Positions 8,269-22,867 are shown, counted from the stretch's first letter. The stretch is 64,000 bases of DNA from Ministeria vibrans ATCC 50519 (GCA_943704425.1 CALSCP010001488.1:88416-152415); one strand, 5' to 3'. Program-made: numbers and translations. Notes: a model not told the origin generated them from the sequence alone.

Positions 8269-11200
8269 TTAATCACTCAATTGTGTCAACAGAGCAACAC
8301 CTCGCAACACCCACTTGGACGACTCTTCGCTGCTGGGTAAGGCAATGCTCGTAATAAAATTTGTCGAATGACCCCTAAGAAAATGACACAAAAGAAGAGT
8401 CAACGCGAGTTAAGCAATCGACACACACAACATTCCTTACGTGGTTGAGAGTGTTCCGCGACGATCAGACGTCTTGTACAACGGACACTCATACACATAC
8501 GATGCGCCGCCGCCACCACCACTACCACTACCACCACCACTATTACTAGCAACAGTAGTAGCACTGCCTTCGCCAGCGGCCGTCTTGCGCACGGGCCGCA
8601 ACCACACGACGGGCATGGCGTCAAACAACTGCTTGGCCAGTGCGTCCCCAAGACGCGCCCGCTCCCGGTCCCACCGCGCCCCTTCCAGGAACAGTCCCCG
8701 CACATACACTCCATCCTCCGGTGCAGTCTCAGGTACACTGTCGCCAAGCACCTCGTAGCTGAACCCAAGTTCGTCAATGGGAATCTGCTGTTTTCGCGCA
8801 TAATTTTGAAGTGCACCTAAAAAAAACCAAACACCATTTAGATCAGTCAATTTTAACAAAATAATTATTGCTGTTTGTTTTTTTTATCACTAACCAGTGA
8901 GAAAGCTCTGTGTAAAGTAAAAACCAGAGATCCAAAAACAAGCGGGTTTCCCATTGTCGATCCAATTCTGAACACAGTGTGATGAGTGTTTTTTTTTGTT
9001 TTTGTTCTCCTCCACTTTTTCTTCTCTTACCTGAAGGAAATTCAAACGCGCAACCAAATCATTCACATAACTGCCTAATGGTTTCAGCGACGGATACGAC
9101 CGACTGAGCCACATTTTTGGAACCTAAAAAAATACAGGCAGAAATTATTACATAAACAACAATAACAACGGGAATTACGTTATAATTGTTACCTGGTTGG
9201 CCAAAATGCTGACATATATAGCCTCGAGCTCCGCATTCATCACCAGTAGTCCTTTGATTGCCTTGCGAAGCTGCTCGAGTGACGTCCGGATTGTCAAAGT
9301 CAGTCGGTTGAACCGTTTGGTTTCCTACATGAACGGCACAGATGAACAACAAACATTCAAAGCGGTTTACAACATAGATTGGTACCTGGACCAGCACAGT
9401 GTTCATGCTTTCGTTGTAGTCGGTCGGGTACTTGCGCAACACCGCCGCAGTGTCGTAGTCCGCTGGCAGTTTCCCCAGCACATCCGACGCCACTCGGTCT
9501 ACCATCTCATCCGTCGTCACTGCACTCCCACTCCCACTCGACACCTTTGCTTGCGTCAAAAGTACACTCTCAAACAATACACGCGTCTCCTGTAGGTCCT
9601 TGGTAATGTCTGCATTCGTGTGCATCCCAAACACCTACGCAAAACGAGAAACTTACTTAAAAATTCTGCCTCTTTGTTTCTATCACTCTGCATTTTTTTT
9701 CTTTTCTCCCTCTCTCTCTACTACTTTGTTTCATTCTTTCTCTTCTATCTCTCTTCTCTCTCCTCCCCTCTCCTCTCCTCTCCTCTCTCTCTTTCCCTCA
9801 CTCAAACTCCTTGCTTACTTCCGGTTGCTGCTCCAAAGGAAGTCCTCTAATGTACGCTAGATAGTCATCGTACGATCCTTTGGCCGGTGCAAAGTACGTT
9901 CCGCTCTCCGAGAATCGATACGCATCATCCGACACAATCTCAGTACAGAAAAACTAACAAAATAAAGACGTCAATTTCAATCGTAAGTGTCAAGTTTATA
10001 TCATACCTTTTTGAGGATGGCTCTCAGAGTGCGACGATCCCAGTCGTCGGTGACGCGCCCCCCATAGTTACATTCGCCCACAAGGTAGGAGAGAGCCGGG
10101 AGAGGCAGGGAATCGTACTCGTTGAGGAACATGTGCAGCTGGCGCACCGAGATGCGCAAGTCCGACTCGTTGAACTCGTAGGGAATGTTCCAGCCGAGCG
10201 CAGAGAACTTGCGACGCTCTTGGACAAGCGCGTGGAAAAAGCACAGACCAAAGAGCATCTTCTCCCACGCGTGATCCTGGCTGCAGCCATTGAAAAAGGC
10301 CGGATCGCTCAGCGGGTCGGTCAGGTACGAGCGCAGTAAATTCGCCTTGAGACCCTTCGGCGGCTCGTTGGTCAGCTTGACGCCATTCTGCAGCACCGAC
10401 ACGGGGAAAGCATCCGACGGGTACGACGTCAGCCAAAGACGGAAATCGGGGTGCACCGATTCTGGTCGTAGCTCCTCACACAGTCGCTCAAGGGTCGGCA
10501 TCCTACCACACAAAACAAACGAAATAAAAAAAATTCTTATCATTATTAATTATTATTATTAATTAATAAAATTAATACCATTTGACGGCCAAGTGACAGT
10601 TCTGAAGGACCACCCAGGTGCCCTCCTTGACTGCTTTGACAAGCATCGCCTGCGCAATGGGGCCCTGGCCTTGCCCCAGCGACAGTGTCTGCATGCGCGA
10701 GCCGCCAAAGCCCATGTCGTCGGCAAACTTGAGAAGAGATGCCATGGGATCTGCGCCAGGCGACAGGATAAACACGAGCGGTGCACACGCGTGGCTGTCG
10801 GCAAACGACCCCGCAAGATCAAACGGAGGCGGTTCAACAAAGCGCTGGCCCAAATCACCGGCAACCACCGACACAATGGCAGGCACTGCCTTGTCAGGAC
10901 GCAAACAGCGTGTCACCAGCAGACGCACAATGGGCTCCAGGTCATTCAGCGGTCCCATCGGCAGAGGCATCTCGTGGGGCACTGCAGAATCGTAGACGGC
11001 CTTCCACGCGTCTCCTTGGCTCAAAATATGCTCGCGTAGCCCATCAAATGGCTTCATGTCACTCAGACGGCACAGCTCGTCCCACGCCTTGTCTGGCAGC
11101 CACGCAGCGTGCACATTCGCATGGACATTGTCCAGAGCCAGTCCTCCCGTCAGCACAAACCGCCAATGCGCGTCACTCAGACGACCCTGCGCCCGACGCA

Positions 11201-14200
11201 GATTGGCACACAGCAGGAACGAAAAGAGCAGCTTGTCCTTCTCAAACAACGATCGACACACATTGCAGTACAGCGCATATTTAAAGTGCGCTTCGAGTGT
11301 CGCCAATCGCTGCTCCAAATTTGTAGTGCGCTCCGTATTCTCAATCGACAGCACAAACAGATTGATGAACCAGCCCAGCGAGTACTGGTACATCGGTTCA
11401 ATGCTCGCCAGATCAGCCAACGTAAAAAACAGTACAGACGAGTGTGTGGCAATCGACCGGTAGCCACTAAAAAGGAAAAAAAAAAAATTAAGAGTATTGT
11501 GAGAGCCGAGACTCAAACACACAAACAACACTCGAGAAAGAAAAGAAAAAACACAAATACAAACATAAACACACAAACCTCCGTGTTTGCTCGATACTGC
11601 GCTCCGTTTCCTCTGCAACCGCTTGTTTCTCACTAATCTCAGTCGCAAGTGCTTTGCTCGACGACAAAACCTAACAATTTATCAATATGACATCTTACAG
11701 ATGGTATTCCTTTTTCTGACCTCAATTGCAGATTCGTCTTCCAAAATATTCCCTTCGCTCGTCGACAATACCTCCAAAATGCGACTCTCAATCTCTTTCA
11801 GCGTCTTCTGATTCTTCGCCGATTGAATAATCAGTCGACTAAAACACACAAACCAATCAAAAAGAATCCTTTCGATCAGCTTCACAATGTACCTTCGCTC
11901 TTCTTCCAATTCGGGTCGTTCCTTTGCAACGACAATTCCCAGAATCTGATCTTCAAGACCTTCGGGCGTAATCATAAAATTCAACACTGTCACTTTCACA
12001 CTCAGCTCAGGCAAAAAGTGAGGATTGCACAGTTTTGTCGTAATGTAAAACCTACAATTTCAATTAAATAAAAAGCACACTCAAAGATTGCAAATACCTG
12101 AACTCACTAGAGTACTCAATGGTAGCGTCACCCAGTCGGATGCATGTTGCTCCGCCCTGTTTGAACGTCTGTTTTAGCAGAAGTGGCTCCAAAATCGGAT
12201 CGAGCTCCTCTCCCACATTCTCAAGCAGAACGGGCGTTCCAAACTGCACACAATTCATTCATTTCGCACGAGAATGTTTTTTATTTTATTTATTTTTACC
12301 TGAATGCAGTTTTCAAGGGTACGCACAAAGTCAGAATCGGACAGTTTGATAACATGAAGGTTGTTGTCCTTCTCCATGTTCTTGACCCACTTGTTGGCCT
12401 GGCCCTGGGGATCGATCATGAGCGGCCACCGTCGCGATGTCGCCACCATGATGCCGTTGTCGACCGAGAAACCGTCGGTGGGCAATCCCGCAATGTTCCA
12501 CCCACGAATGGTCACTGGATCCCCGAGCGTCTGACTTAGCGACACGTTGCCCGAGCACGGAATGGCACTCTCACGACACCTTTCAAGCCACTCACGTGTC
12601 TGCTCGGCGCGAAACACCCCCGTAAATGCGCCCAGGTACGCCACCAGACCCGCACTCACAAGCACGTCGCCCGTCAGGTTGTGATACAGATCGCCCAGCT
12701 CGCTCGCTGTCTCGTTCCAGCGTGCTTTCTCGCCTCCCAGTCCGCCAATAAGTCGCTCCGCACGCTCCAGTTTCTTCTCAGTGAGCTCCACCTGTCGCTG
12801 CAGATCCTCCTTCTTGCGCATCATGGCATCGTACTCGTCCTTGAGTTCCTGCAGCGTGTCCTGCACCTTCTTGAGCTCGGCGCGTTTCTCATTCAACGCC
12901 GCCATGCTCACCGCCAGCTCGCCCTCGGCCACGGCAAGCTTGGCTCGCTTGGGCGCCACCACACGCGCTACCTTCTCGTACGAGTCAATGGCGCGCACCC
13001 ACTTGCAAAGGCCCTCGGCGGCCTTGCTCGCATTCGCGACCTTGGCTGGCACAAACTCCGGGTTGGTTATGTACTTGTCACGAATGGCCTTGATGACGCG
13101 CGCAGGCACGTCGTCCTTATCAAAAGCTTTGATCGTTTTGAGGAAGTTGAGCTCCGAGATGAGTCGCTTCGAGGGTCCCAAGTAGTCGTCAATCATCTTG
13201 CCGCTGCCCGACGGATCCTTGACACGGTCGGCACGCACCTGCATGAGCACACACACCGCCTCAAGCACCAGCTGGACACCAAGCGGCGGTGTCTTGTACG
13301 TCTTGACAATGTTAATGTCGCCTGGCGTGAGCGTGTCCAGCGCCGCCAGTGCCTCTTCTAGAATAGGAATAGCCTCCGCCAGGTCCGCTTCGCACTCATC
13401 CTTGATGCCCTGCGCCACCTGCGCCTGTCCATTGGCAACAGCCTCGTCCTTTTTGACTACTTCCTCGACAGCTGCAACCTTCTCGCTCTCGCGTGTCACG
13501 TTCACCATAATCGCATCGGTCTCGTCGCTCGCGGCTACCAGCTGTGGCTGCAGTGCCTCCAGCTCCGCTTGCATTCGCACCACTTGCGACGCTGCTGACT
13601 CGAGCTTCTCCAGCCCAACCAGGTAGCGTCGTTGGTTGCTGCGAACCGCATCGCGTTTCCGCGCCAACAGAGTCTTGAACGTGCCAATGAGCTCCAGATA
13701 GCTGGTGGGCGTCACATAGTTGTGCCGGCCGAGCACCGAAAGAAATCTGGTCGACAGCTCGCGTGTCGACTGATGAAAGTGCTTGCACAGATCGACACAG
13801 GCTTCGCGCACCGACTCGCCCATCTCAACAGTGGAGAGCAGACGACGCGCGACAACAGTGAGCGCATCGTCGGGCCACGACGTAAACCAATCAATGGTGC
13901 AGCAGTTGATGAGCGACGGGAACTTGCGCAAGCGCGTACGAAAGGCCTCGCCAATCGGCGACATGGCCAACGCCAAGTGGAGGTTGTCACGCACGCGTGA
14001 GACAAAAAACTTGTAGAGAGCCAACGGCGACGGGTCGGCCTGCTGTCTGCCTCCACCGGCGGCAAGCATGAACGCCGGTCGCACCGTGTCAATGATCTCC
14101 TGCCGCTCGTCGGGCGCAAAGATATTGGGCACCTCACCGCCATTGAGAATGTTGCTGAGATCTTCAAAGTAGTTGTCGCTCTGCGCCTGCGTGTCCGAAA

Positions 14201-17200
14201 ACAGGAACACCAATTGTTGGCCCTTCTCACCGGCGAGACGCAGCACACGCTTGAGGTCTTCTCTCCACTCAACGTTGGTGTACGACTTGGTGATCTCCAC
14301 TTGGAACAGCTGGTAGCCGGCCATGTATGCGGCAAGGCGCATCAACGACTGGCGACCACTGCCGCCTACACCCACCAGAAGCGCATGTCCACGCGGTTGC
14401 TTGATCACTCGACTCACACGTGCCACATGTTCAATGGCAAAGCGGAACAGCACCAGCTCCATGCGCGTCTTGTGCATGTTGTTGTACTCGTCGAGGTTGG
14501 CGGCCGTCGTCGTCTGCAACAAGTCCCAGTCGCGAATCTCTTCGTAGCGCTTCTGTGTGTTGGCCGGATCGCCAAAGTCACAAAAGAGAATTGAGTGGGT
14601 GTCGTTCTCATCGACTACGCCGTCGCCGTCGCCGTCCAAGTGCGCAAACAGCGTGTCAAAGGTGCGCTCAAAACGACAGCGTACCACGCCACGAACGTGC
14701 TGGAAGAGCCACTGCCGATCGTGGTCGTCGACAAGACGGTCGTAGAATACACGGTAGGTCTCGTGGACCCACAGGCGCACGAGCGCGTCGGGGTCGCACA
14801 CAGTCTCGGTGCCGCACAAGAGCACACCCTGGATCACTCGCCCAAAGTCACGCAGGTTGAACAGGTAGTGCGACTTGGCCGGCGTTGGCAACAGATTGTG
14901 CGTCGCGCCGTTGAAGACGTCGAGTGTGGCACGCACCAACTGTGCGGCAGGCTCGCGGAAGAGATCGTCAAAGCCACGCGCGCGAATATGCCAGTTGACA
15001 ATCTCGGAGAAGATGCGCACCATGGTGTGCTCGCCAAATGTGTTGACAGTGAGAGTGTTGAAGTGGCGCGCAAACCGTGGTGTGAGCGTGTTGCGACCGC
15101 CGCCCGGAGGCCCCATGGCGCACACAAGCTGTGTGTCGACAATGCGCTGGGAAGTTGTGTCGCGGCGGTCGTACCACATGCTGTGATCCAGCATCTGGCG
15201 CAGCAGCTCAATCGGGGGCTGTGCGCCGTAGTACTCCTTGGCCGGCATGTTGACGTCGTCGACAAAGAGCACCGCTTTGGTGCCCGCCCGTGGCCCAAAC
15301 ACCCCCTTGCGTCGCTTGTCCAGGTTCGCCATGATAATGTCTTGGACCTGATTAGCACTAGTCTGCGCCGAAAAGTTGATCACCACCGGCTTGTACTGGT
15401 CGTGCGGCAGTCCATGCAGCAGCAAGTCTTGGATGTACAGCGACTTGCCCGTGCCCGTCGGCCCGACCACCATGCACGACTTTTGGTGGCGCACCAGCGA
15501 CTCCACGAGAAACTTGTAGCGCACCGTGTCCACCGTGGGCACAATGATGTCACTGAAAGAGGCGCGGTCGGGAATGCTCCAGTCATCGGGGATCATTGAG
15601 GTCCACCGCTGCCAGCTGCCCGCCATCGTGCTGTCGTCGTCGTCGCCCTTGACATAGCAGAATTCGTAGAGGGAGCGAGCAAGACGTGGATCGTTGTCAC
15701 GGCTATGGTTGGTGCTGCTTATGTTGGGCAGTACATCTTGGCAAAGGGGTGCCCGCAGGTTGGACGAGTCGTCGTAGCCGATCACGACAAATCCATGCTG
15801 CTCCATGAGGGCCGACATGGACGTCTCGGCGGCACAGAGCACATGCACAAACTCACTGAAGCGCAATCGACTCTCTTCATCAATAGGCGAGCCAACAGAC
15901 CAAACGAGAGCAAAGACAAAGATGTTGGGGAGCCGTGCAAGCGCCGTCGCATTACCGCCCATTGTAGCGTACGCCTCGGCATTGGCACAGGCGAGCATCT
16001 CGTCCGACATGCACTCAACAAGGTTCATCAGCGACCGCACCATGTTGATGTCAGTGCACGGCGCCACTTCACGACAACACGCACGCATAAAAGCAAGACA
16101 AGGATCGACAAAACGCTCAAAGAGATGTGTCAGACACGAGCGAACCTCCGAGTCAATCCAAATAGGCAGCGTCGCAAGCCACGAGCGCATCAGCGGACGC
16201 CAGCCCAGCGATGCTGGCTCCATGTAGATCATTCCACAGCGGCTCACCGTCGCCGGAGACGCAACCTCCAAATCCATCGGTTCAAACACCAAATTCATTC
16301 CTATCAAAATAAAATTAATATCAAAAACAACATAAAAATATTAGTTAGTAGTAATACCTTCGGGCATTTGAATGATTTCTCCGCTCGTGAGACAAAGAAT
16401 TTTGTTATCGTCCAGCACAGTGTTCCTAAAACAAGTCGCAAACCGGTAAACGAAAAAAGAAAGAGACAGAGACAGAGAGACAGAGGCAGTGAAGGTACTT
16501 ACACTAGGAGAAAAAAAAAAAAAAAAAGTTAGTCCGCTTCCGCTTTAGGGGGTTTTTTTCTTCTTTTCTTCCTTTTTTCGTACTTGATTCAATCCAAATG
16601 GCATCGACAGGACCGTCAAAGATGAGCCACTTTGTGTCTGAGGACTGACTCACGGCAAAAGCACGAAAGGCGTTTGCAAGAATGCCATCGCTCCACTCGT
16701 GCGAGACGGGATCAAAGGACCCGTACAGCTGGCCGAGGGTAATACTCTTGGGATTGATGATGCGAGACTGGATTCCGACGTAATCGCCAACCGAGCGCGC
16801 CTTGAGTGCGTTCATGGCGCCCATCAACACCTTGCATGCCGACGACTTGCCGCCAAAGGGCTCTCCAACAACCATAAAGCCGTGACGCACAATCATCATC
16901 TCGTAGATCTGCAGCACTTTCGACACAAACACCGGTTCAGGTTGCAGATTCAACACACGGCACTGCTCATGGATGGCAGGGAGAAGAGCATCATAGTCGG
17001 GCACAGGCAGACGCACTCCAGGAAACAGATCGCTCGTAATGCCCTCAAACAGTGGCAAGTCGTGCGCAAGGAATTTCGCTACACGAGAGAGGAAGAAATG
17101 AATTTTATAATAATAAAAGGACGTTGTAGCTGTTGTTGTGTCTTACGGAGATTAACGTCGTTGATGGAACGCAACATAATGATGTCTTCGTTCTCGTCGG

Positions 17201-20200
17201 GGTACTTGAGCTTGAGGTTTCCGGCGGCAGTGAGAACAGACTTGACCGCGCGCATTCCATAGTCGTAGTGGTGTTGTGACGACAGCTGCTCGCTGCACAG
17301 ACGATATGTGGCGACAATCTTACGCGAGAGCGCCCGTGCATTGACAAACCCATACGAGTACAGAAGAATTTCTGCAATGAGAGCGTAGTCGGGGACCATC
17401 ATGGCCACGGTGCGGAACAGTGCCTTGAGGTTGTCTAGCATAACACAATAACAATAATATAAAATTAATAACAATAATTATAACATAAAAAAGATAATAA
17501 TAATAATAATAATTATTATGATGATGATGATAATAATAATAATAGTTATTATTACTACGCAACAATCAAGTACAGTATAATGATTGTACAAATCATTTTC
17601 ACTTTCTTTCTCTTTGTCTTCCTCTTTCTCGTTCTCTTTGTACGTGTACCTGGCAACTCGGAACGGCCAGCATAGCCAGGGTTCATGGTGATGAAAACAC
17701 TGCACGTGGGATCGAGCGAGATCTCAGTGCCTTCAAAGAGGAAGCGACGTAAACCCTGGTTGATGCCCACTTGAATGGTCAGAATCTGCTGGGCAATGAC
17801 AGAGAGAACTTCGAGTTCAATGCGGTTGAACTCGTCAAAGCACGACCAAGCGCCACACGAAGCAAGACCCTTAAAAAATTTGCCCATGGCGATGTAGTCG
17901 AGACCATCGGAGCAGTTGAACACCACACACTGTTTAGCGACCGCCTTGGCCAAATCTTTGACCGTCTCCGTCTTGCCAGTCCCTGCAGGTCCCTCCGGCG
18001 CTCCGCCCAAGTGCAAGTGCAGTGCGCCAAAGAGTGTGCGATAACACCGGTCCGTTAGTGGCGTAATGACCAGTCTTCCTGTATTTCCAATGTATTCGTA
18101 GCCGTACGCCAGCTGCGAGTTGATCATTCGTGTCATCACATTGTTGTCCTGGATAAAGAACGAAAGGAAGTAAAAAAAAAGTAAATAATTTATAGAACGA
18201 GTGTCAAAACAGGACAATATGCAAAATAAATATGTAAAATAGTAACACTAAAATTGCTTTGTGACAGATCATCATTGTACCTCCCAATAGTAACGCATTT
18301 GACTGAGCCAGGCAAAGTCCTTTTCGTCGGTGACGTGTCCATCAACGAGGCCCTGAAGGACATCACGGGCGTGCACATCAATGACCACAAGTGCGCCCAG
18401 AGTGCGACGGTTCATCTTGTTGAGCTTGCCGCGCACAAGCTTGACAATGTCCTCGATTTGCGCCGAGCACTGTGCTAGATAGGCAGCGACGTGCGACTCG
18501 CCAGCTTGAATAGCAGCATGTACGTCTTTGGTCCAGAACACTTGGTTCACGGCAATGACAACCTGTCCGGGCCACGAGACGACCCACTGGATGCGCTCGT
18601 CGTCCTCGTAGCACGCGAGAGCCTCCGTCGTCACCCGGTGCACTGCCTCCAGCATAGCTGTTTCTAGCTGGATCAGCCATCGTTCCACCTGCCCACGCGC
18701 CGCCACAGTGTTGATTGGATGGCTCAATGCCACTAGTTCACCCTCGCTAACAAAGAGAAAAACAATAAAAATGATCAGAAACACCAAGGGGAGGATGCAA
18801 TAATAATTTTCATTTCTCACTGATACCTGCTCTGCATGTGAGTGATTTCAAGGTCGTCGGTGAAGGAGAGTTTGGCAATACCCTGAAAGCACTTCTTAAG
18901 GTGGGGTTGGACCCGTCGGGGATCCTTGGTCTCGCTGAGGATCTCGAGTAGTTCGTCGTCGCTAAGGAAAAAGAAGCGAGGGAAGGCGAGGCGCTTCTTC
19001 TCAAGGTAGCGATTGAGACCGTTGCGAACGACGTCAAGCATTTCGTTGGCGCTGCGGAGACGATCGCGCATGTTTTCGATACTCGTGACGGTGAGAACGT
19101 GGCGATCGACGAGCGCGGCGGCCATAAGCTCGCGCCACGTCTTGTCGACCAGATTGAATTTGCGGCCCTCTTCGGGCATTTGTGCGTTGATGTCGGGCGA
19201 CGAGAAGATAAGCTCAAGCGAGAGCCATGTCGCCTGCACCTTGAGCCACTCGTCAATGATTTCCTGCATAAGCATGAGACGCGCCTCCCATGCGTGCACC
19301 TCGGCCTCGCTGGCCTTCGCAAAGGGTGATCCGCGCATCGTCTGCGTTCGCACAATGTGGTCCTCGAGTAGCATTTGGATCTCGTCGATGGCCGTTAGAA
19401 TGGACGTGCCCGAGTCGCGGTAGGGCACCATACTGAACTCCATAGCGTCCCAATCGGTTCGCATGCGCTCGAGGGCCTTCTCCAGAGAGTATTCCTTTGT
19501 GGCGAGTTCGCTAATGGTCGAGAAGGCATCGACAAAGCGTTCGAGATCGAGACGGAAAAAGTCGCGCAGGTGCGACTTTTCCGACGGTCGAATGTCGCGT
19601 CCACACGCTTTGCTCATTTGCGACCAGTGACGGTCCTTGAGGCCCGGCACACAAATGCATTGTATGAGTGGCATGCGTAGACGGAACGCGTCGACTTCGC
19701 CACGCGTCTTCTGTGCCAACTGCAACGGCTCAGGCTCGCTTGCAAACGCCTTCTGGGCCTTGTACAGGGCACGCCAGCACGCGCCTGTCTCCGTCTCGAC
19801 TGTATCCGCTTCCACTTCGCAAAAGGCACCGTCCATCCACAGCGCCTCGCAGCGGTTCCAGTCGACAATGGCCGCGTACAGTTCGGTGTAGGGCTCAAGC
19901 TTGAGCGTGAGCGACTCGCGTGAAGGATACTCGGTGAGTGACCAGCCAAAGGCCGTCTCTTCGCTGTTGAACGACGTGATTTTCTGACTCGCCAGCTCGA
20001 GTCGCGACTTGAGTGCATTGGACTTCTTCTGGTAGCGCTGCACCTCGCCGTGATCGCCCCAGCCAGCAAGTTCGCCCACTTGCGTTTCGAGCGTCGCCAG
20101 GTCGGCGACAAACTTGCGACGGCGCGCAACGAGATCGTCTTCAAGGCGTTTGCGTGCGCTCCGCATAATTACGCCGTGCTCGTCGAGCACCACATCGATG

Positions 20201-22867
20201 CGCTGCGGCCAACTGAACGTGGCAATATTCTGGGCAACGTCGTCGGAACTAACCGTCGCGTGGCTCACGAGGAACTCAAGATGAGCGCGTGCCGTTTCGA
20301 TGTCGTCGTCGAGGGCGCGCAGTGTGCGGCGCTGCACCTCGTTCGTGTACGCTTTGACATCCATAAATTGTTCGGTGTTAGCCGGCACGGTCAGCGCCTT
20401 GTCGCTGATCTCTTGGAAGCGTGCACATATGCGTGCATTAGCCAGACAAGTGTCGCGTGCAACGCGCTCGACGAGACGGTCCGCAAGCGCTTCGGCACGC
20501 TCAGCGATGGCATTGTTAAGCTGGGCACAGTACAGATCGATCATGCCCATCGCCACATAGTCGACTGTGTTGTAGCGGGCGTCGTGTGCAATAGCACGGA
20601 ACCGAAGAATCTCGGCGGTAAACTCTTCAAACGTGTGTTGCTGCGGCGCCTTGGCCCTGGGCACACCATTGTCGTCGACATCCTCCTCATTGTCGTCATC
20701 ATCCTCGCCTTCGACGTCCTCGTCGCCCTCGTTGTTGTTGTCACCCTTGTGCTTGCGGGTACCACGTGCAATGCCTGCAAGAAACTCGTCGACGTGGTGC
20801 TGTGCCTCGCCAGTCACAATGGACGCAAATTTGGTGTAATGAGCGAGATAGGACTGAGGCTGGAGCTGAGCAGCACAGAAGACGCCTGTGACCTGCTCCT
20901 TGAGCTGGGCAATCAGCGATTCCTCGCTGTACGGCACAATGTAGTCGCTGCGCGGCCCTTGGGCATAAATGGAGGGAGCAACGCGAGCGGCATCGCTGGT
21001 CGGGTGGGGGAGGCATACGACGGCGTCGAGCATGCGGTCAAAGACGGCGAGCACACTGGAGAGGAGCGTCTCAAAGGATGGCTCAAAGTGCATCGAGGTG
21101 CTGCCGAGGACGAGACGCACGACAAAGCGAGGAGGTCGCACAGGCCAGGCGGCCGTGTAGAGGTCGCGGTAGTCGTGGAGGCTGGCGTAAAGTGACTCAT
21201 GGGCGAGATTTGCAGTGAGCGTTGCCACGGCGGCCACGAGCGATTCGTCCTGCTGCTCCCGCTGCTGCTGCTCGAGCTGCGCCAGAATGTGCGACTGGAA
21301 ACGCACGCCAATGTCTTCGCGGTAAGCATGTAAATGTTGAGTGATGAGCGAGTCAAAGGCAGTGAGTTCCAGAGCAGAAGAAAGAGTCGTGGTGTCGTTG
21401 CTGGTAGACGAAGCCATGAGCGCACGCGTGTCGACAAGGCGGGTGTGGGCATGATCGCGGTGCCAGGTCGAGAGAATAGAGCGGAGTGCCGGCTGAACCG
21501 ACTGCAGTGAGGTGGTGAGAGATGTGCGAGCGTCGGTGAAAGATCGATGCCAGGGTGAGGGCACGAGACGCAGTTCGGGCTCAAGGTTCATGCGATCGTC
21601 GTCGGCAAGCAACTGTTGCTTTGCGCGCGGATCGCGCAGCACAAAGTCTACAATGGCTTTTTTCACGGACAACAAGTAGTCGTCGCGCATTTCATCGCCG
21701 AGCTGTTCGGTGAGTTGCTCGAGTTTGTCGGTGCCGCTGAGGCGAGTCGGAATGCGTTCGCGCACATTGGCATACCACTGTTCTTCCATTGGCGCGACGT
21801 GCTCCGTGTCGATGCCGTTGTTGACGTAATAATAGTAGCGAGCGAGTTCCTTCTCGGTGGGTGACGCGGGGCGGTCGTGGACAAGGTCTCGAATGGGTGG
21901 AAGCTGCGGTGGCGGCGGAGGCGGTCCGTGTTTCTCTGTATCCTGCTGCACAACAATGTTGACGAGAGCGTTGCGAAAGGCCTCACGATCGCGCTTTGTG
22001 TTGATCAGTTGGCGACCGCCGGGTGCCTGCAGAGTCGCTTGCACCGGAGGTACACCTTGGCTTTCGCTCTCGGACCAAAGATGGCGACCGCTTCGACGAG
22101 ACGCGGGAGACGATGTGAGAGCCGGCGCGAACATGCAACGCACGGAGTGGTCTGTTGGCTGCATTGCAGAGGCAGCAGCAGCAGCAACAGAGGGTGTGAT
22201 TGAGTCTACAAGCCATGCTGGGGTGGGTGCTGTAGGCGGTGGAATGGACGATCGCCGGCGTTTCACAAGAGTCGCGGGGGTTGCTAAGGAAAAACAGTGA
22301 AATAATCAGTGAGGAGGAATTATAATTGCGCTGTGCTTTGAGTGGATGCATGAGTGCATGTATGTGTATGTGTGTGTGTGAATGTATAGGTGGAGGTGGA
22401 GTTGGTGCAGATGGGTAGATTTGAGGCAGTGTTTGTGCGTACGTTCTTGTTGATGCGATGCGCCTGTTTCAGTTTCTCGCCATTCCGGCGAATCCTGCAA
22501 CAAAGAACGGACAAGAGATGAGTGATTGTGGCGTCACATGGTTGCATTAAAGTATTCTTCGTGAAGAAAGAGAGCGTGTTGCGAGCAGGAAATAGTTTGG
22601 GAAACGGCTGCTAGGGGCAACGGAGGCAAAGACGAGAAAGAGGAGTGGACGGATGCCGGGACTGCCGAGAGGACGAGAGTGCGTTTATTTGACTTATTCT
22701 CTGTAGTCCCTGTGAAGATTCCTCGCGATGGCTGACAGTAGGAAAGCAGTAAAGGAAACGGAAAGGAAACATTGAAATTTATGATCATTCTTTACCAGAG
22801 GTCCGGTACGAGAAGCAAGGTTGGATCCCTGTGAGAGTCCTCGAGCAATGTTTGGGTGGCCGCTCAT
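8269..22867 (-). CDS. DNAH7: Axonemal inner-arm dynein heavy chain, DNAH7-type; about 20 introns
   Basis: P-loops [24 protein letters not shown] and GVGGSGRQS; FPRFFFLS; DNAH7-type N-terminus [21 protein letters not shown]...[18 protein letters not shown]; C-terminus ...[15 protein letters not shown] (stop 8269-8271). Junctions in the conserved region are phase-consistent once the 1-nt exon is included. The 5'-most exons and the start at 22867 are tentative. Confidence 0.93.
16503..16503 (-). other. Predicted single-nucleotide exon (T) of the dynein gene
   Basis: Minus strand reads GAA TCA A|gtacga...actaac(T)n ctcctag|T|gtaagt...ttttag|G AAC ACT GTG CTG GAC GAT AAC. A+T+G gives the conserved Met. 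Confidence 0.85.

What the first reader, a model, noticed from the sequence alone, without database searches (positions are those of the whole stretch)
16425..16584. Single-nucleotide exon supplies the middle base of a conserved Met codon in the dynein AAA2 region
Seen in sequence: the upstream exon ends ...TGG ATT GAA TCA A (16584, phase 1) and the downstream exon starts G AAC ACT GTG CTG GAC GAT AAC (16425, phase 2), so direct joining frameshifts the gene. Between them is a complete 80-nt intron (gtacga, branch site ACTAAC, long poly-T, ctcctag), one T at 16503, then a perfect GTAAGT donor opening a 77-nt intron ending ttttag. Established: dyneins conserve WIE[NS]MNTVLDDN here, and A+T+G restores that Met exactly. 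Inference: one codon is split over three exons. One-nucleotide exons are very rarely documented (Arabidopsis APC11 is the usual example), imply ordered or recursive-like splicing, and are missed by gene predictors. Skipping would truncate the motor, so it could act as an on/off switch for flagellar dynein.
Basis: partly seen in the sequence, partly recalled or inferred. Interest (0 to 1): 0.9.

Follow-up and report, generated by a model that had tools for sequence, protein, structure and literature searches.

The report
One-base exon in two dynein genes
A flagellar dynein motor gene only reads in frame if a single T, lying between two ordinary short introns, is spliced in as a one-base exon. 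An old sister gene in the same genome has the same layout, so it is very likely real, though no RNA reads could be obtained here.

Summary
On the minus strand, the exon ending TCA A (16584) is followed by an 80-nt GT-AG intron, a lone T (16503), a 77-nt intron opening with GTAAGT, and an exon starting G AAC (16425). A+T+G restores the Met of WIE[NS]MNTVLDDNK, which is ATG in every readable homologue surveyed.

An exhaustive GT/GC-AG enumeration finds no other splice solution of the right length. The gene is an otherwise intact DNAH7 orthologue with about 20 introns.

The main new evidence is a second gene in the same genome, a DNAH12 orthologue on contig C25. It has the identical layout: TCT T|gtacgc..ccgtag|T|gtaagt..ctttag|G AAT, giving TTG Leu. 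Its introns differ in length and sequence, yet the ten bases TAG-T-GTAAGT are conserved. This argues strongly against assembly error, pseudogene or chance.

Homologues elsewhere carry only the first intron (A|TG) or only the second (AT|G). The site is therefore two neighbouring introns present together.

The "on/off switch" idea has no support.

One-base exons are already documented in Arabidopsis APC11, Fusarium CYP621A and 13 Coprinopsis genes, so this is a new member of a known rare kind. The same scan earlier reported spliced 3-nt exons on other DNA of this genome.

The parts
16584..17078 (-). Upstream coding exon (495 nt). It encodes the end of AAA1 and the start of AAA2, and ends ...TGG ATT GAA TCA A in phase 1.
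   Evidence: Pfam AAA_6 positions 256-327 match. In homologue P0003, AAA_5 (AAA2) covers the motif.
16504..16583 (-). Intron 1 (80 nt). Donor GTACGA, branch box ACTAAC at 16533-16528 (branch A about 25 nt from the 3' end), a T17 tract, acceptor ctcctAG.
   Evidence: The same position (A|TG) holds the sole intron in L018 and L019. The GTACG donor is shared with paralogue C25.
16503..16503 (-). One-nucleotide exon: T, the middle base of the ATG (Met) codon.
   Evidence: the only solution of correct length; a conserved T in the same setting in paralogue C25, at L003 position 1893.
16426..16502 (-). Intron 2 (77 nt). Perfect donor GTAAGT, a pyrimidine-rich body, acceptor ttttAG.
   Evidence: GTAAGT occurs at none of the other 19 donors read in this gene but is conserved in C25. 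The same position (AT|G) holds the sole intron in own-genome paralogue C1168.
16358..16425 (-). Downstream coding exon (68 nt): G + AAC ACT GTG... = (M)[22 protein letters not shown](G). It is followed by a 57-nt intron (16357-16301).
8269..22266 (-). The host gene, an axonemal inner-arm dynein heavy chain (DNAH7 orthologue). About 20 introns were read. Stop codon TAA at 8271-8269. The true 5' end was not determined.
   Evidence: Pfam pieces dovetail across exons. The canonical C-terminus was read. The best PDB match is DNAH7.

Best explanation
The T at 16503 is a genuine, constitutive one-nucleotide exon of a DNAH7-type axonemal dynein heavy-chain gene. Two ordinary short spliceosomal introns sit one base apart inside the Met codon of the AAA2 motif [13 protein letters not shown], one after the A and one after the T.

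Each intron is recognised on its own by intron definition, which is normal for 50-200-nt AT-rich introns in GC-rich exons. Because one base cannot hold a 3' splice-site complex and a U1/5' splice-site complex at once, the two introns must be removed one after the other. Either order leaves a usable site: AAT|GTAAGT after intron 1 goes, or ctcctag|TGAAC after intron 2 goes. The mRNA then reads TCA-ATG-AAC.

Unusually strong intronic signals appear to compensate for the missing exon context: a perfect GTAAGT donor for intron 2, and an ACTAAC box plus T17 tract for intron 1.

Shown here: the anatomy, the frame requirement, conservation in a paralogue, and the existence of each intron alone in homologues. 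Inferred: actual splicing of the T, the sequential order, and the compensating role of the strong signals.
For: (1) The anatomy is exactly as described.

(2) I enumerated every one- and two-intron GT/GC-AG solution. In the window gene only A+T+G gives an in-frame junction of the conserved length. The other solutions insert 3-5 residues using poor sites.

(3) Among the top 120 homologue fragments that show the motif, Met is nearly invariant, with Leu in three. In the metagenome survey, 75 of 80 loci are contiguous [N/S/D]-ATG-AAC, and every locus where the site could be read (79 of 80) has ATG.

(4) Paralogue G000:C25 (L003) has the same layout with different introns, 61 and 94 nt against 80 and 77. 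The introns do not align, yet TAG-T-GTAAGT, the GTACG donor and the TTTAG|GAA acceptor are conserved. Its codon is T+T+G = Leu, and direct joining gives TGA.

(5) The two genes are old paralogues: 48% protein identity over AAA2 to the start of AAA5 and 25% in the tail. In the tree, the window gene is sister to animal DNAH7 (SH-aLRT 100) and C25 is sister to animal DNAH12 (99).

(6) The gene is otherwise intact. The Pfam pieces DHC_N2, AAA_6, AAA lids, AAA_7, AAA_8, MT, AAA_9, Dynein_heavy, AAA_lid_11 and Dynein_C dovetail across exons, and the canonical C-terminus is present.

(7) Each intron exists alone in homologues. A|gt..ag|TG is found in L018 and L019. AT|gt..ag|G is found in own-genome C1168, which is DNAH10-like.

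(8) GTAAGT occurs at 0 of the 19 other donors read in this gene.

(9) Precedent exists. One-nt exons are spliced in Arabidopsis (PMC4674806), Fusarium (PMC12940212) and Coprinopsis (13 genes, PMC12230235). An earlier scan report, s1-763915, says 3-nt exons are spliced in this same genome. I did not check that report; it is a lead only.
Against: No identical or near-identical protein or transcript fragment exists in the protein collection.

In C25 alone, a single-intron alternative (donor GTCTTG) is in frame but deletes two motif residues.

In C25 the upstream exon ends in a T run (TCTT), where a homopolymer miscount is conceivable. This does not apply to the window gene (TCAA).

The paralogues share a derived NKI(LCL) residue, so old local gene conversion could make them less than fully independent witnesses.
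Confidence: 0.85

Rival explanations
1. Assembly or sequencing indel. A T was dropped at the end of the upstream exon (true sequence ...TCA AT|gtacga), so there is one 158-nt phase-2 intron like that of paralogue C1168, and the internal tag-T-gtaagt is a coincidence.
For: C1168 has exactly AT|gtacgc...ttttag|G. Single introns of 130-215 nt exist in this gene. In C25 the exon end is a T run. An internal CAG-T-GTATGT does occur by chance inside a normal in-frame intron elsewhere in the genome (L150).
Against: The same 'error' would have to occur at the same codon in two separately assembled genes. In the window gene the context (CAA|GT) is not a homopolymer. TAG-T-GTAAGT is conserved as ten identical bases inside otherwise unalignable introns. 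The motif is rare genome-wide, with 14 hits. Only one copy of the locus exists in the assembly.
Confidence: 0.04
2. The real mRNA uses another splice solution. Examples are a two-residue deletion (WIE-NTV, as is possible in C25), a few inserted residues, or non-canonical sites, so the T is not an exon.
For: One search lists in-frame alternatives: WIESIPSLNTV... in the window gene and WIE-NTV in C25.
Against: No alternative works in both genes. All of them change the length of a motif that has constant length in every readable homologue. They use weak sites (acceptor TGTAAG, donors GCCTCT or GTCTTG), whereas the 1-nt solution uses the strongest signals in the gene.
Confidence: 0.05
3. The 1-nt exon is real but regulated. 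Skipping it serves as a switch that shuts off this inner-arm dynein through frameshift and NMD.
For: Skipping would give a premature stop about 24 codons downstream in the window gene (read) and an immediate TGA in C25. Microexons are often alternative in animals (general knowledge).
Against: Nothing here points to regulation. Both introns carry unusually strong constitutive signals. No conserved extra element or RNA structure was found (z-scores 0.65 and 0.29). The documented 1-nt exons are described as constitutive or required (PMC4674806, PMC12940212).
Confidence: 0.08
4. The gene is a decaying pseudogene with a frameshift.
For: The apparent frameshift itself.
Against: About 4000 codons are otherwise open across about 20 canonical introns, with all dynein domains in order. 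The gene is 55-59% identical to animal DNAH7. The paralogue has the same layout.
Confidence: 0.01

Closest known systems
Arabidopsis thaliana APC11 single-nucleotide exon (Guo & Liu 2015, PMC4674806)
   Same: A single base flanked by AG and GT is needed to keep the frame. It is constitutive. The authors propose intron definition with one-after-the-other removal. Gene predictors miss it.
   Different: There the exon is an A inside a 422-nt interval of a small gene, and it was proven by cDNA and mutated GFP reporters. Here it is a T between 80- and 77-nt introns in a ~4000-codon dynein gene of a protist. It is supported by paralogue conservation only, with no RNA data.
Fusarium CYP621A one-nucleotide exon (Nelson & Syed 2026, PMC12940212)
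   Same: It is the middle base of a codon in a conserved motif. A phase-1 exon end meets a phase-2 exon start. The combined interval is about twice the usual intron length. It is conserved across homologues.
   Different: There the base is G (AG-G-GT, matching both splice consensuses), it is conserved among 20-24 orthologues of one genus, and SRA reads confirm it. The authors suggest rescue of a base loss by a cryptic exon. Here the base is T, and it is conserved between ancient paralogues (DNAH7/DNAH12). Homologues that carry each intron alone point instead to two neighbouring introns.
Coprinopsis cinerea long-read annotation (PMC12230235)
   Same: It shows that 1-nt exons (13 genes), 2-nt exons (57) and 3-nt exons (27) exist in a genome with short introns, and that leaving them out breaks gene models.
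   Different: That is a genome-wide catalogue from long reads in a fungus. Here, limited pattern scans found only the dynein pair in this genome.
Zero-nucleotide recursive splicing (ratchet points) in Drosophila and vertebrates (as cited in PMC4674806)
   Same: An acceptor is immediately followed by a regenerated or strong GTAAGT donor, and removal is stepwise.
   Different: Ratchet points keep no base and subdivide very long introns. Here one base is kept and both introns are short.
Stwintrons and the 1-nt intron shift (Fekete et al. 2017, PMC5587772)
   Same: [quoted passage not shown]
   Different: In a stwintron one intron interrupts a splice signal of the other and nothing is retained. 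Here the [D1,2] and [A2,3] readings do not restore the frame, and the two introns abut a retained base.

Membership tests
Single-nucleotide (1-nt) spliceosomal exon | The flanking coding exons are out of phase by exactly one base, and no ordinary single intron restores the frame. | tested here: met
   The enumeration gave no single GT/GC-AG intron solution in the window gene.
Single-nucleotide (1-nt) spliceosomal exon | One base lies directly between an AG acceptor and a GT donor, and each flanking intron is complete (donor, branch/pyrimidine tract, acceptor) and of normal length. | tested here: met
   One search shows 80-nt and 77-nt introns, an ACTAAC box with T17, and GTAAGT. Other introns of the gene are about 56-215 nt.
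Single-nucleotide (1-nt) spliceosomal exon | The inserted base restores a conserved residue and the conserved motif length. | tested here: met
   ATG = Met. The codon is ATG in every locus where the site could be read, 79 of 80 metagenomic homologues, and Met is nearly invariant in the 120 fragments.
Single-nucleotide (1-nt) spliceosomal exon | The arrangement is conserved in homologous genes while the introns diverge. | tested here: met
   Paralogue C25. Orthologues in related species could not be examined, because near relatives are absent or withheld.
Single-nucleotide (1-nt) spliceosomal exon | The mature mRNA contains the base (cDNA or RNA-seq junction reads). | not testable with these tools
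No transcript-derived protein fragment was found.
Axonemal inner-arm dynein heavy chain, DNAH7 orthology group | Full dynein motor domain order, and closest to DNAH7 among named heavy chains. | tested here: met
   Pfam domains. PDB phmmer scores: DNAH7 1622 bits against DNAH12 1455 and DNAH3 1448. In the tree it is sister to animal DNAH7, SH-aLRT 100.
Stwintron (spliceosomal twin intron) | An internal intron interrupts the donor, branch or acceptor of an external intron. Two nested excisions leave no base behind. | tested here: not met
   A [D1,2] reading needs G|GT at the donor, but the sequence is A|GTAC. An [A2,3] reading (internal intron 16504-16426) gives TCA AAA CAC..., which is out of frame and runs into a stop (worked out). 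Only the arrangement that retains the T works.
Zero-nucleotide recursive splice site | YAG|GTRAGT with no retained base, inside a very long intron. | tested here: not met
   One base (T) lies between the AG and the GT and is required for the frame. The whole interval is 158 nt.

The most novel reading that the evidence does not exclude
The one-base exon may be ancient and evolutionarily informative. It could have existed before the DNAH7/DNAH12 duplication, which the tree places before this protist's lineage split from animals, and so have been kept for hundreds of millions of years.

It may also be the living 'both introns present' intermediate that explains why homologous dynein genes carry introns at adjacent positions: before the codon, after A, after T, and after G. 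Apparent one-base 'intron sliding' would then arise by gain of a neighbouring intron followed by loss of either one, with no stwintron needed.
Probability: 0.3. Interest if true: 0.65.

Novelty: new member of a known kind. Interest (0 to 1): 0.5.

Why it matters
One-base exons mark the lower limit of what the spliceosome can define. Few are documented, and they break automatic gene models. Here the break would split or truncate a ~4000-residue flagellar motor gene, and its paralogue as well.

This case adds a non-plant, non-fungal lineage and a core cilium gene. It shows retention in two paralogues that diverged before the split from animals. It also comes with natural 'single-intron' relatives at each of the two positions, which makes the origin of such exons, and of one-base intron-position shifts, directly testable by comparative genomics and minigenes.

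In practice, annotators of this genome should model both dynein genes with the 1-nt exon.

Tried and rejected

Spliced sequence. All searches were exon by exon, by reference. The joined step, for example looking for the junction string in collections, was left out.

Own or near-relative proteins or transcripts. Two large protein searches gave best identities of only 65% and 57% and no identical fragment.

RNA structure spanning the two introns. There was no signal: z = 0.65 for the window gene and 0.29 for C25. The A/G-rich tract that could pair with T17 in intron 1 is not conserved in C25.

GC/ORF heuristic for collecting introns across the window. It was too noisy to use, so donors were read by eye instead.

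Genome-wide search for more 1-nt exons. YYYYAGNGTAAGT gave 14 sites and YYYYAGNGTAYGT gave 40, of which 30 were inspected. None besides the dynein site is a needed 1-nt exon. Weak-donor cases, and acceptors like that of C25 (CCGTAG), were not covered.

Readings rejected: stwintron, recursive-site, pseudogene, and AT-AC (no ATATCC-like donor).

P0121, whose protein starts MNTVLDD, turned out to be contiguous at the site.

Full report
THE OBSERVATION

It runs ...TGG ATT GAA TCA A(16584) | gtacga...gg-ACTAAC-T17-ctcctag(16504) | T(16503) | gtaagt...cgtttaccggtttgcgacttgttttag(16426) | G(16425) AAC ACT GTG CTG GAC GAT AAC. Intron 1 is 80 nt (16583-16504) and intron 2 is 77 nt (16502-16426). The ACTAAC box lies at 16533-16528, which puts its branch A about 25 nt from the acceptor. 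The upstream exon translates to ...[16 protein letters not shown] and the downstream one to [22 protein letters not shown]. Joining 16584 directly to 16425 shifts the frame.

THE GENE

Pfam finds the following along the minus strand between about 22266 and 8269, with profile coordinates that dovetail from exon to exon:
- DHC_N2
- AAA_6 (AAA1) in three exon pieces
- the AAA lid, AAA_7, AAA_8, the MT stalk and AAA_9
- Dynein_heavy, split 2-71 / 72-115 over one intron
- AAA_lid_11 and Dynein_C

I read about 20 canonical GT-AG introns and a canonical heavy-chain C-terminus ending at TAA 8271-8269. The best solved-structure match is DNAH7, at 1622 bits against 1455 for DNAH12 and 1448 for DNAH3. 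In homologue P0003 the motif lies inside the AAA_5 hit that follows AAA1, which is AAA2. The gene is therefore intact apart from this one apparent frameshift, which argues against a pseudogene.

IS THE MET REAL?

In the 120 best homologue fragments the motif reads DGPVDA[IV]WIE[NS][10 protein letters not shown], with Met nearly invariant and Leu in three. In 80 homologous loci fetched from metagenomes, 75 were classified as contiguous [N/S/D]-ATG-AAC, and every locus where the site could be read (79 of 80) has ATG. That sample favours intron-poor genes.

ARE THERE OTHER SPLICE SOLUTIONS?

I enumerated every one-intron and every two-intron GT/GC-AG combination between the two anchors. In the window gene no single intron gives an open frame of short length. 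The only solution with the conserved length is A+T+G (WIESMNTVLDDN). The next ones insert 3-5 residues and use poor sites. Stwintron readings fail. [D1,2] needs G|GT at the donor, which is absent. [A2,3], with an internal intron at 16504-16426, gives TCA AAA CAC..., which is out of frame.

THE DECISIVE COMPARATIVE EVIDENCE

Searching the organism's own 29.7-Mb assembly with the upstream exon found the dynein paralogues. One of them, on contig C25 (locus L003), has the same layout...TGG ATT GAG TCT T | gtacgc...(61 nt)...ctccgtag | T | gtaagt...(94 nt)...ctttag | G AAT ACT GTT TTG GAC GAC AAC. Here the codon is T+T+G = Leu, the one substitution also seen in other dyneins. Direct joining would create TGA.

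Aligned, the two loci share the GTACG donor, ten consecutive bases TAG-T-GTAAGT, and TTTAG|GAA. The rest of both introns differs in length and cannot be aligned.

The two genes are old paralogues:
- They are 48% identical over AAA2 to the start of AAA5 and 25% identical in the tail.
- C25 lacks the window gene's next intron and has an extra one upstream.
- Half of the codons in the 68-nt downstream exon differ at synonymous sites.
- C25 scores best against DNAH12.
- In a maximum-likelihood tree the window gene is sister to animal DNAH7 (SH-aLRT 100) and C25 is sister to animal DNAH12 (99). DNAH3 is separate and the chytrid sequences fall outside (quick search, LG+G4, midpoint root; the outgroup row L012 was dropped as too short).

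Two separately assembled genes with the same one-base solution, plus selective retention of exactly the splice signals, make assembly error, chance and pseudogenisation very unlikely.

One caveat applies. Both genes share a derived NKI-LCL where nearly all dyneins have NKK-LCL. An old local gene conversion could therefore have copied the arrangement from one gene to the other.

SIGNAL STRENGTH

Donors in this gene are loose. The other 19 are GTATCA, GTACAA, GTACAC, GTAAGA, GTACGA, GTATTA, GTAAAA, GTATTT, GTACAT, GTCAGA, GTTTGT, GTATTA, GTATGA, GTAAGC, GTACCA, GTAACA, GTAAGA, GTTAGT and GTAAGG. The only perfect GTAAGT is the donor that follows the one-base exon, and it is perfect in C25 as well. 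Intron 1 carries a textbook ACTAAC box and a 17-T tract. C25 has TACTAAA followed by a pyrimidine run. I infer that strong intronic signals make up for the lack of any exon context.

RARITY IN THE GENOME

YYYYAGNGTAAGT occurs 14 times, against 57 for the reversed control. Only the window site has intron-like sequence on both sides. Of the 40 YYYYAGNGTAYGT sites I inspected 30. None is a required one-base exon.

One of them makes a useful negative control. A proteasome alpha-subunit intron (L150) contains CAG-T-GTATGT but is in frame without it. Within these limits the feature is specific to the two dynein genes.

The scan's earlier notes report arrays of 3-nt exons in this genome, and one follow-up states that they are spliced (s1-763915). 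I did not test this. It suggests only that this organism's spliceosome copes with ultra-short exons.

ORIGIN

Each intron exists on its own elsewhere.
- Two contigs from other organisms have a single intron after the A: AAC A|gt..ag|TG AAC. These are L018, from a Logan assembly, and L019, from a JGI metagenome. L018 belongs to the DNAH7 group.
- The own-genome DNAH10-like gene on C1168 has a single 49-nt intron after the T: AAC AT|gtacgc..ttttag|G AAC.
- Other paralogues or homologues have an intron one base before the end of the Ser codon (C2237), between the Ser and Met codons (C1679, DNAH2-like), or just after the Met codon (L118).
- Five own-genome paralogues have none.

The window arrangement is therefore best read as two neighbouring introns present together. 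That differs from the frameshift-rescue scenario proposed for Fusarium. It offers a route to one-base differences in intron position that differs from the stwintron pathway of Fekete et al. (PMC5587772). Whether the pair predates the DNAH7/DNAH12 duplication or spread by conversion cannot be decided here.

MECHANISM

This part is inferred. Each short, AT-rich intron is defined across itself. A single base cannot hold the 3'-site and 5'-site complexes at once, so removal is sequential. Either order leaves a canonical site: AAT|GTAAGT or ctcctag|TGAAC. This is the model already proposed for APC11 (PMC4674806). No conserved RNA structure accompanies the site.

Skipping the T would give a stop about 24 codons downstream in the window gene, or an immediate TGA in C25. 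Nothing suggests that this is used as a switch.

WHAT IS MISSING

The protein collections hold nothing closer than 65% and 57% identity.

COMPARISON AND VERDICT

One-base exons are documented in Arabidopsis APC11 (proven experimentally), Fusarium CYP621A (read-supported) and 13 genes of Coprinopsis (long reads). This is a new member of that rare kind. It is the first I can point to in a dynein or cilium gene and outside plants and fungi, and it is unusual in being shared by two ancient paralogues.

Confidence that the T is a real exon is 0.85. Interest is 0.5.

Noticed in passing
Window 16503 region; L009 (C2237), L002 (C1679), L010 (C1168), L018, L019, L118: Introns occupy five consecutive nucleotide positions around the same Met codon in different dynein heavy-chain genes: AG|T of the Ser codon, between the Ser and Met codons, A|TG, AT|G and ATG|. 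This is a striking cluster of near-identical intron positions.
   Followed up: partly
Window 16400-16395 and L003 about 2010-2015: Both paralogues encode DDNK-I-LCL where nearly all other dyneins have DDNK-K-LCL. This shared derived residue next to the one-base exon may mark an old gene-conversion tract.
   Followed up: no
L150 (G000:C1877:9322-12334), around locus position 1507: A proteasome alpha-subunit gene has an intron that contains an internal cccag-T-gtatgt. The flanking exons are already in frame, so this site looks like a 1-nt exon but is not needed.
   Followed up: yes
Whole genome G000: YYYYAGNGTAAGT is about four times rarer than its reversed control (14 against 57). YYYYAGNGTAAGM is also rarer (44 against 119). 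YYYYAGNGTAYGT is less depleted (40 against 59). This may reflect selection against acceptor-plus-strong-donor juxtapositions.
   Followed up: no
Window 17435-17649 (minus strand): A 215-nt intron of the dynein gene is about 22% GC and is filled with ATT/ATC trinucleotide repeats.
   Followed up: no
Window about 8500-8560 (minus strand): A Gly/Ser-rich run (GGT/AGT/GGC repeats) is inserted in the C-terminal exon of the dynein, just before the conserved YECPLYKT segment.
   Followed up: no
Tree: This genome has separate orthologues of animal DNAH7 and DNAH12, while the chytrid sequences fall outside both. This suggests the organism is closer to animals than to fungi. One bird protein labelled DNAH7 (P0144) sits in the DNAH12 clade, so its label is probably wrong.
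   Followed up: partly
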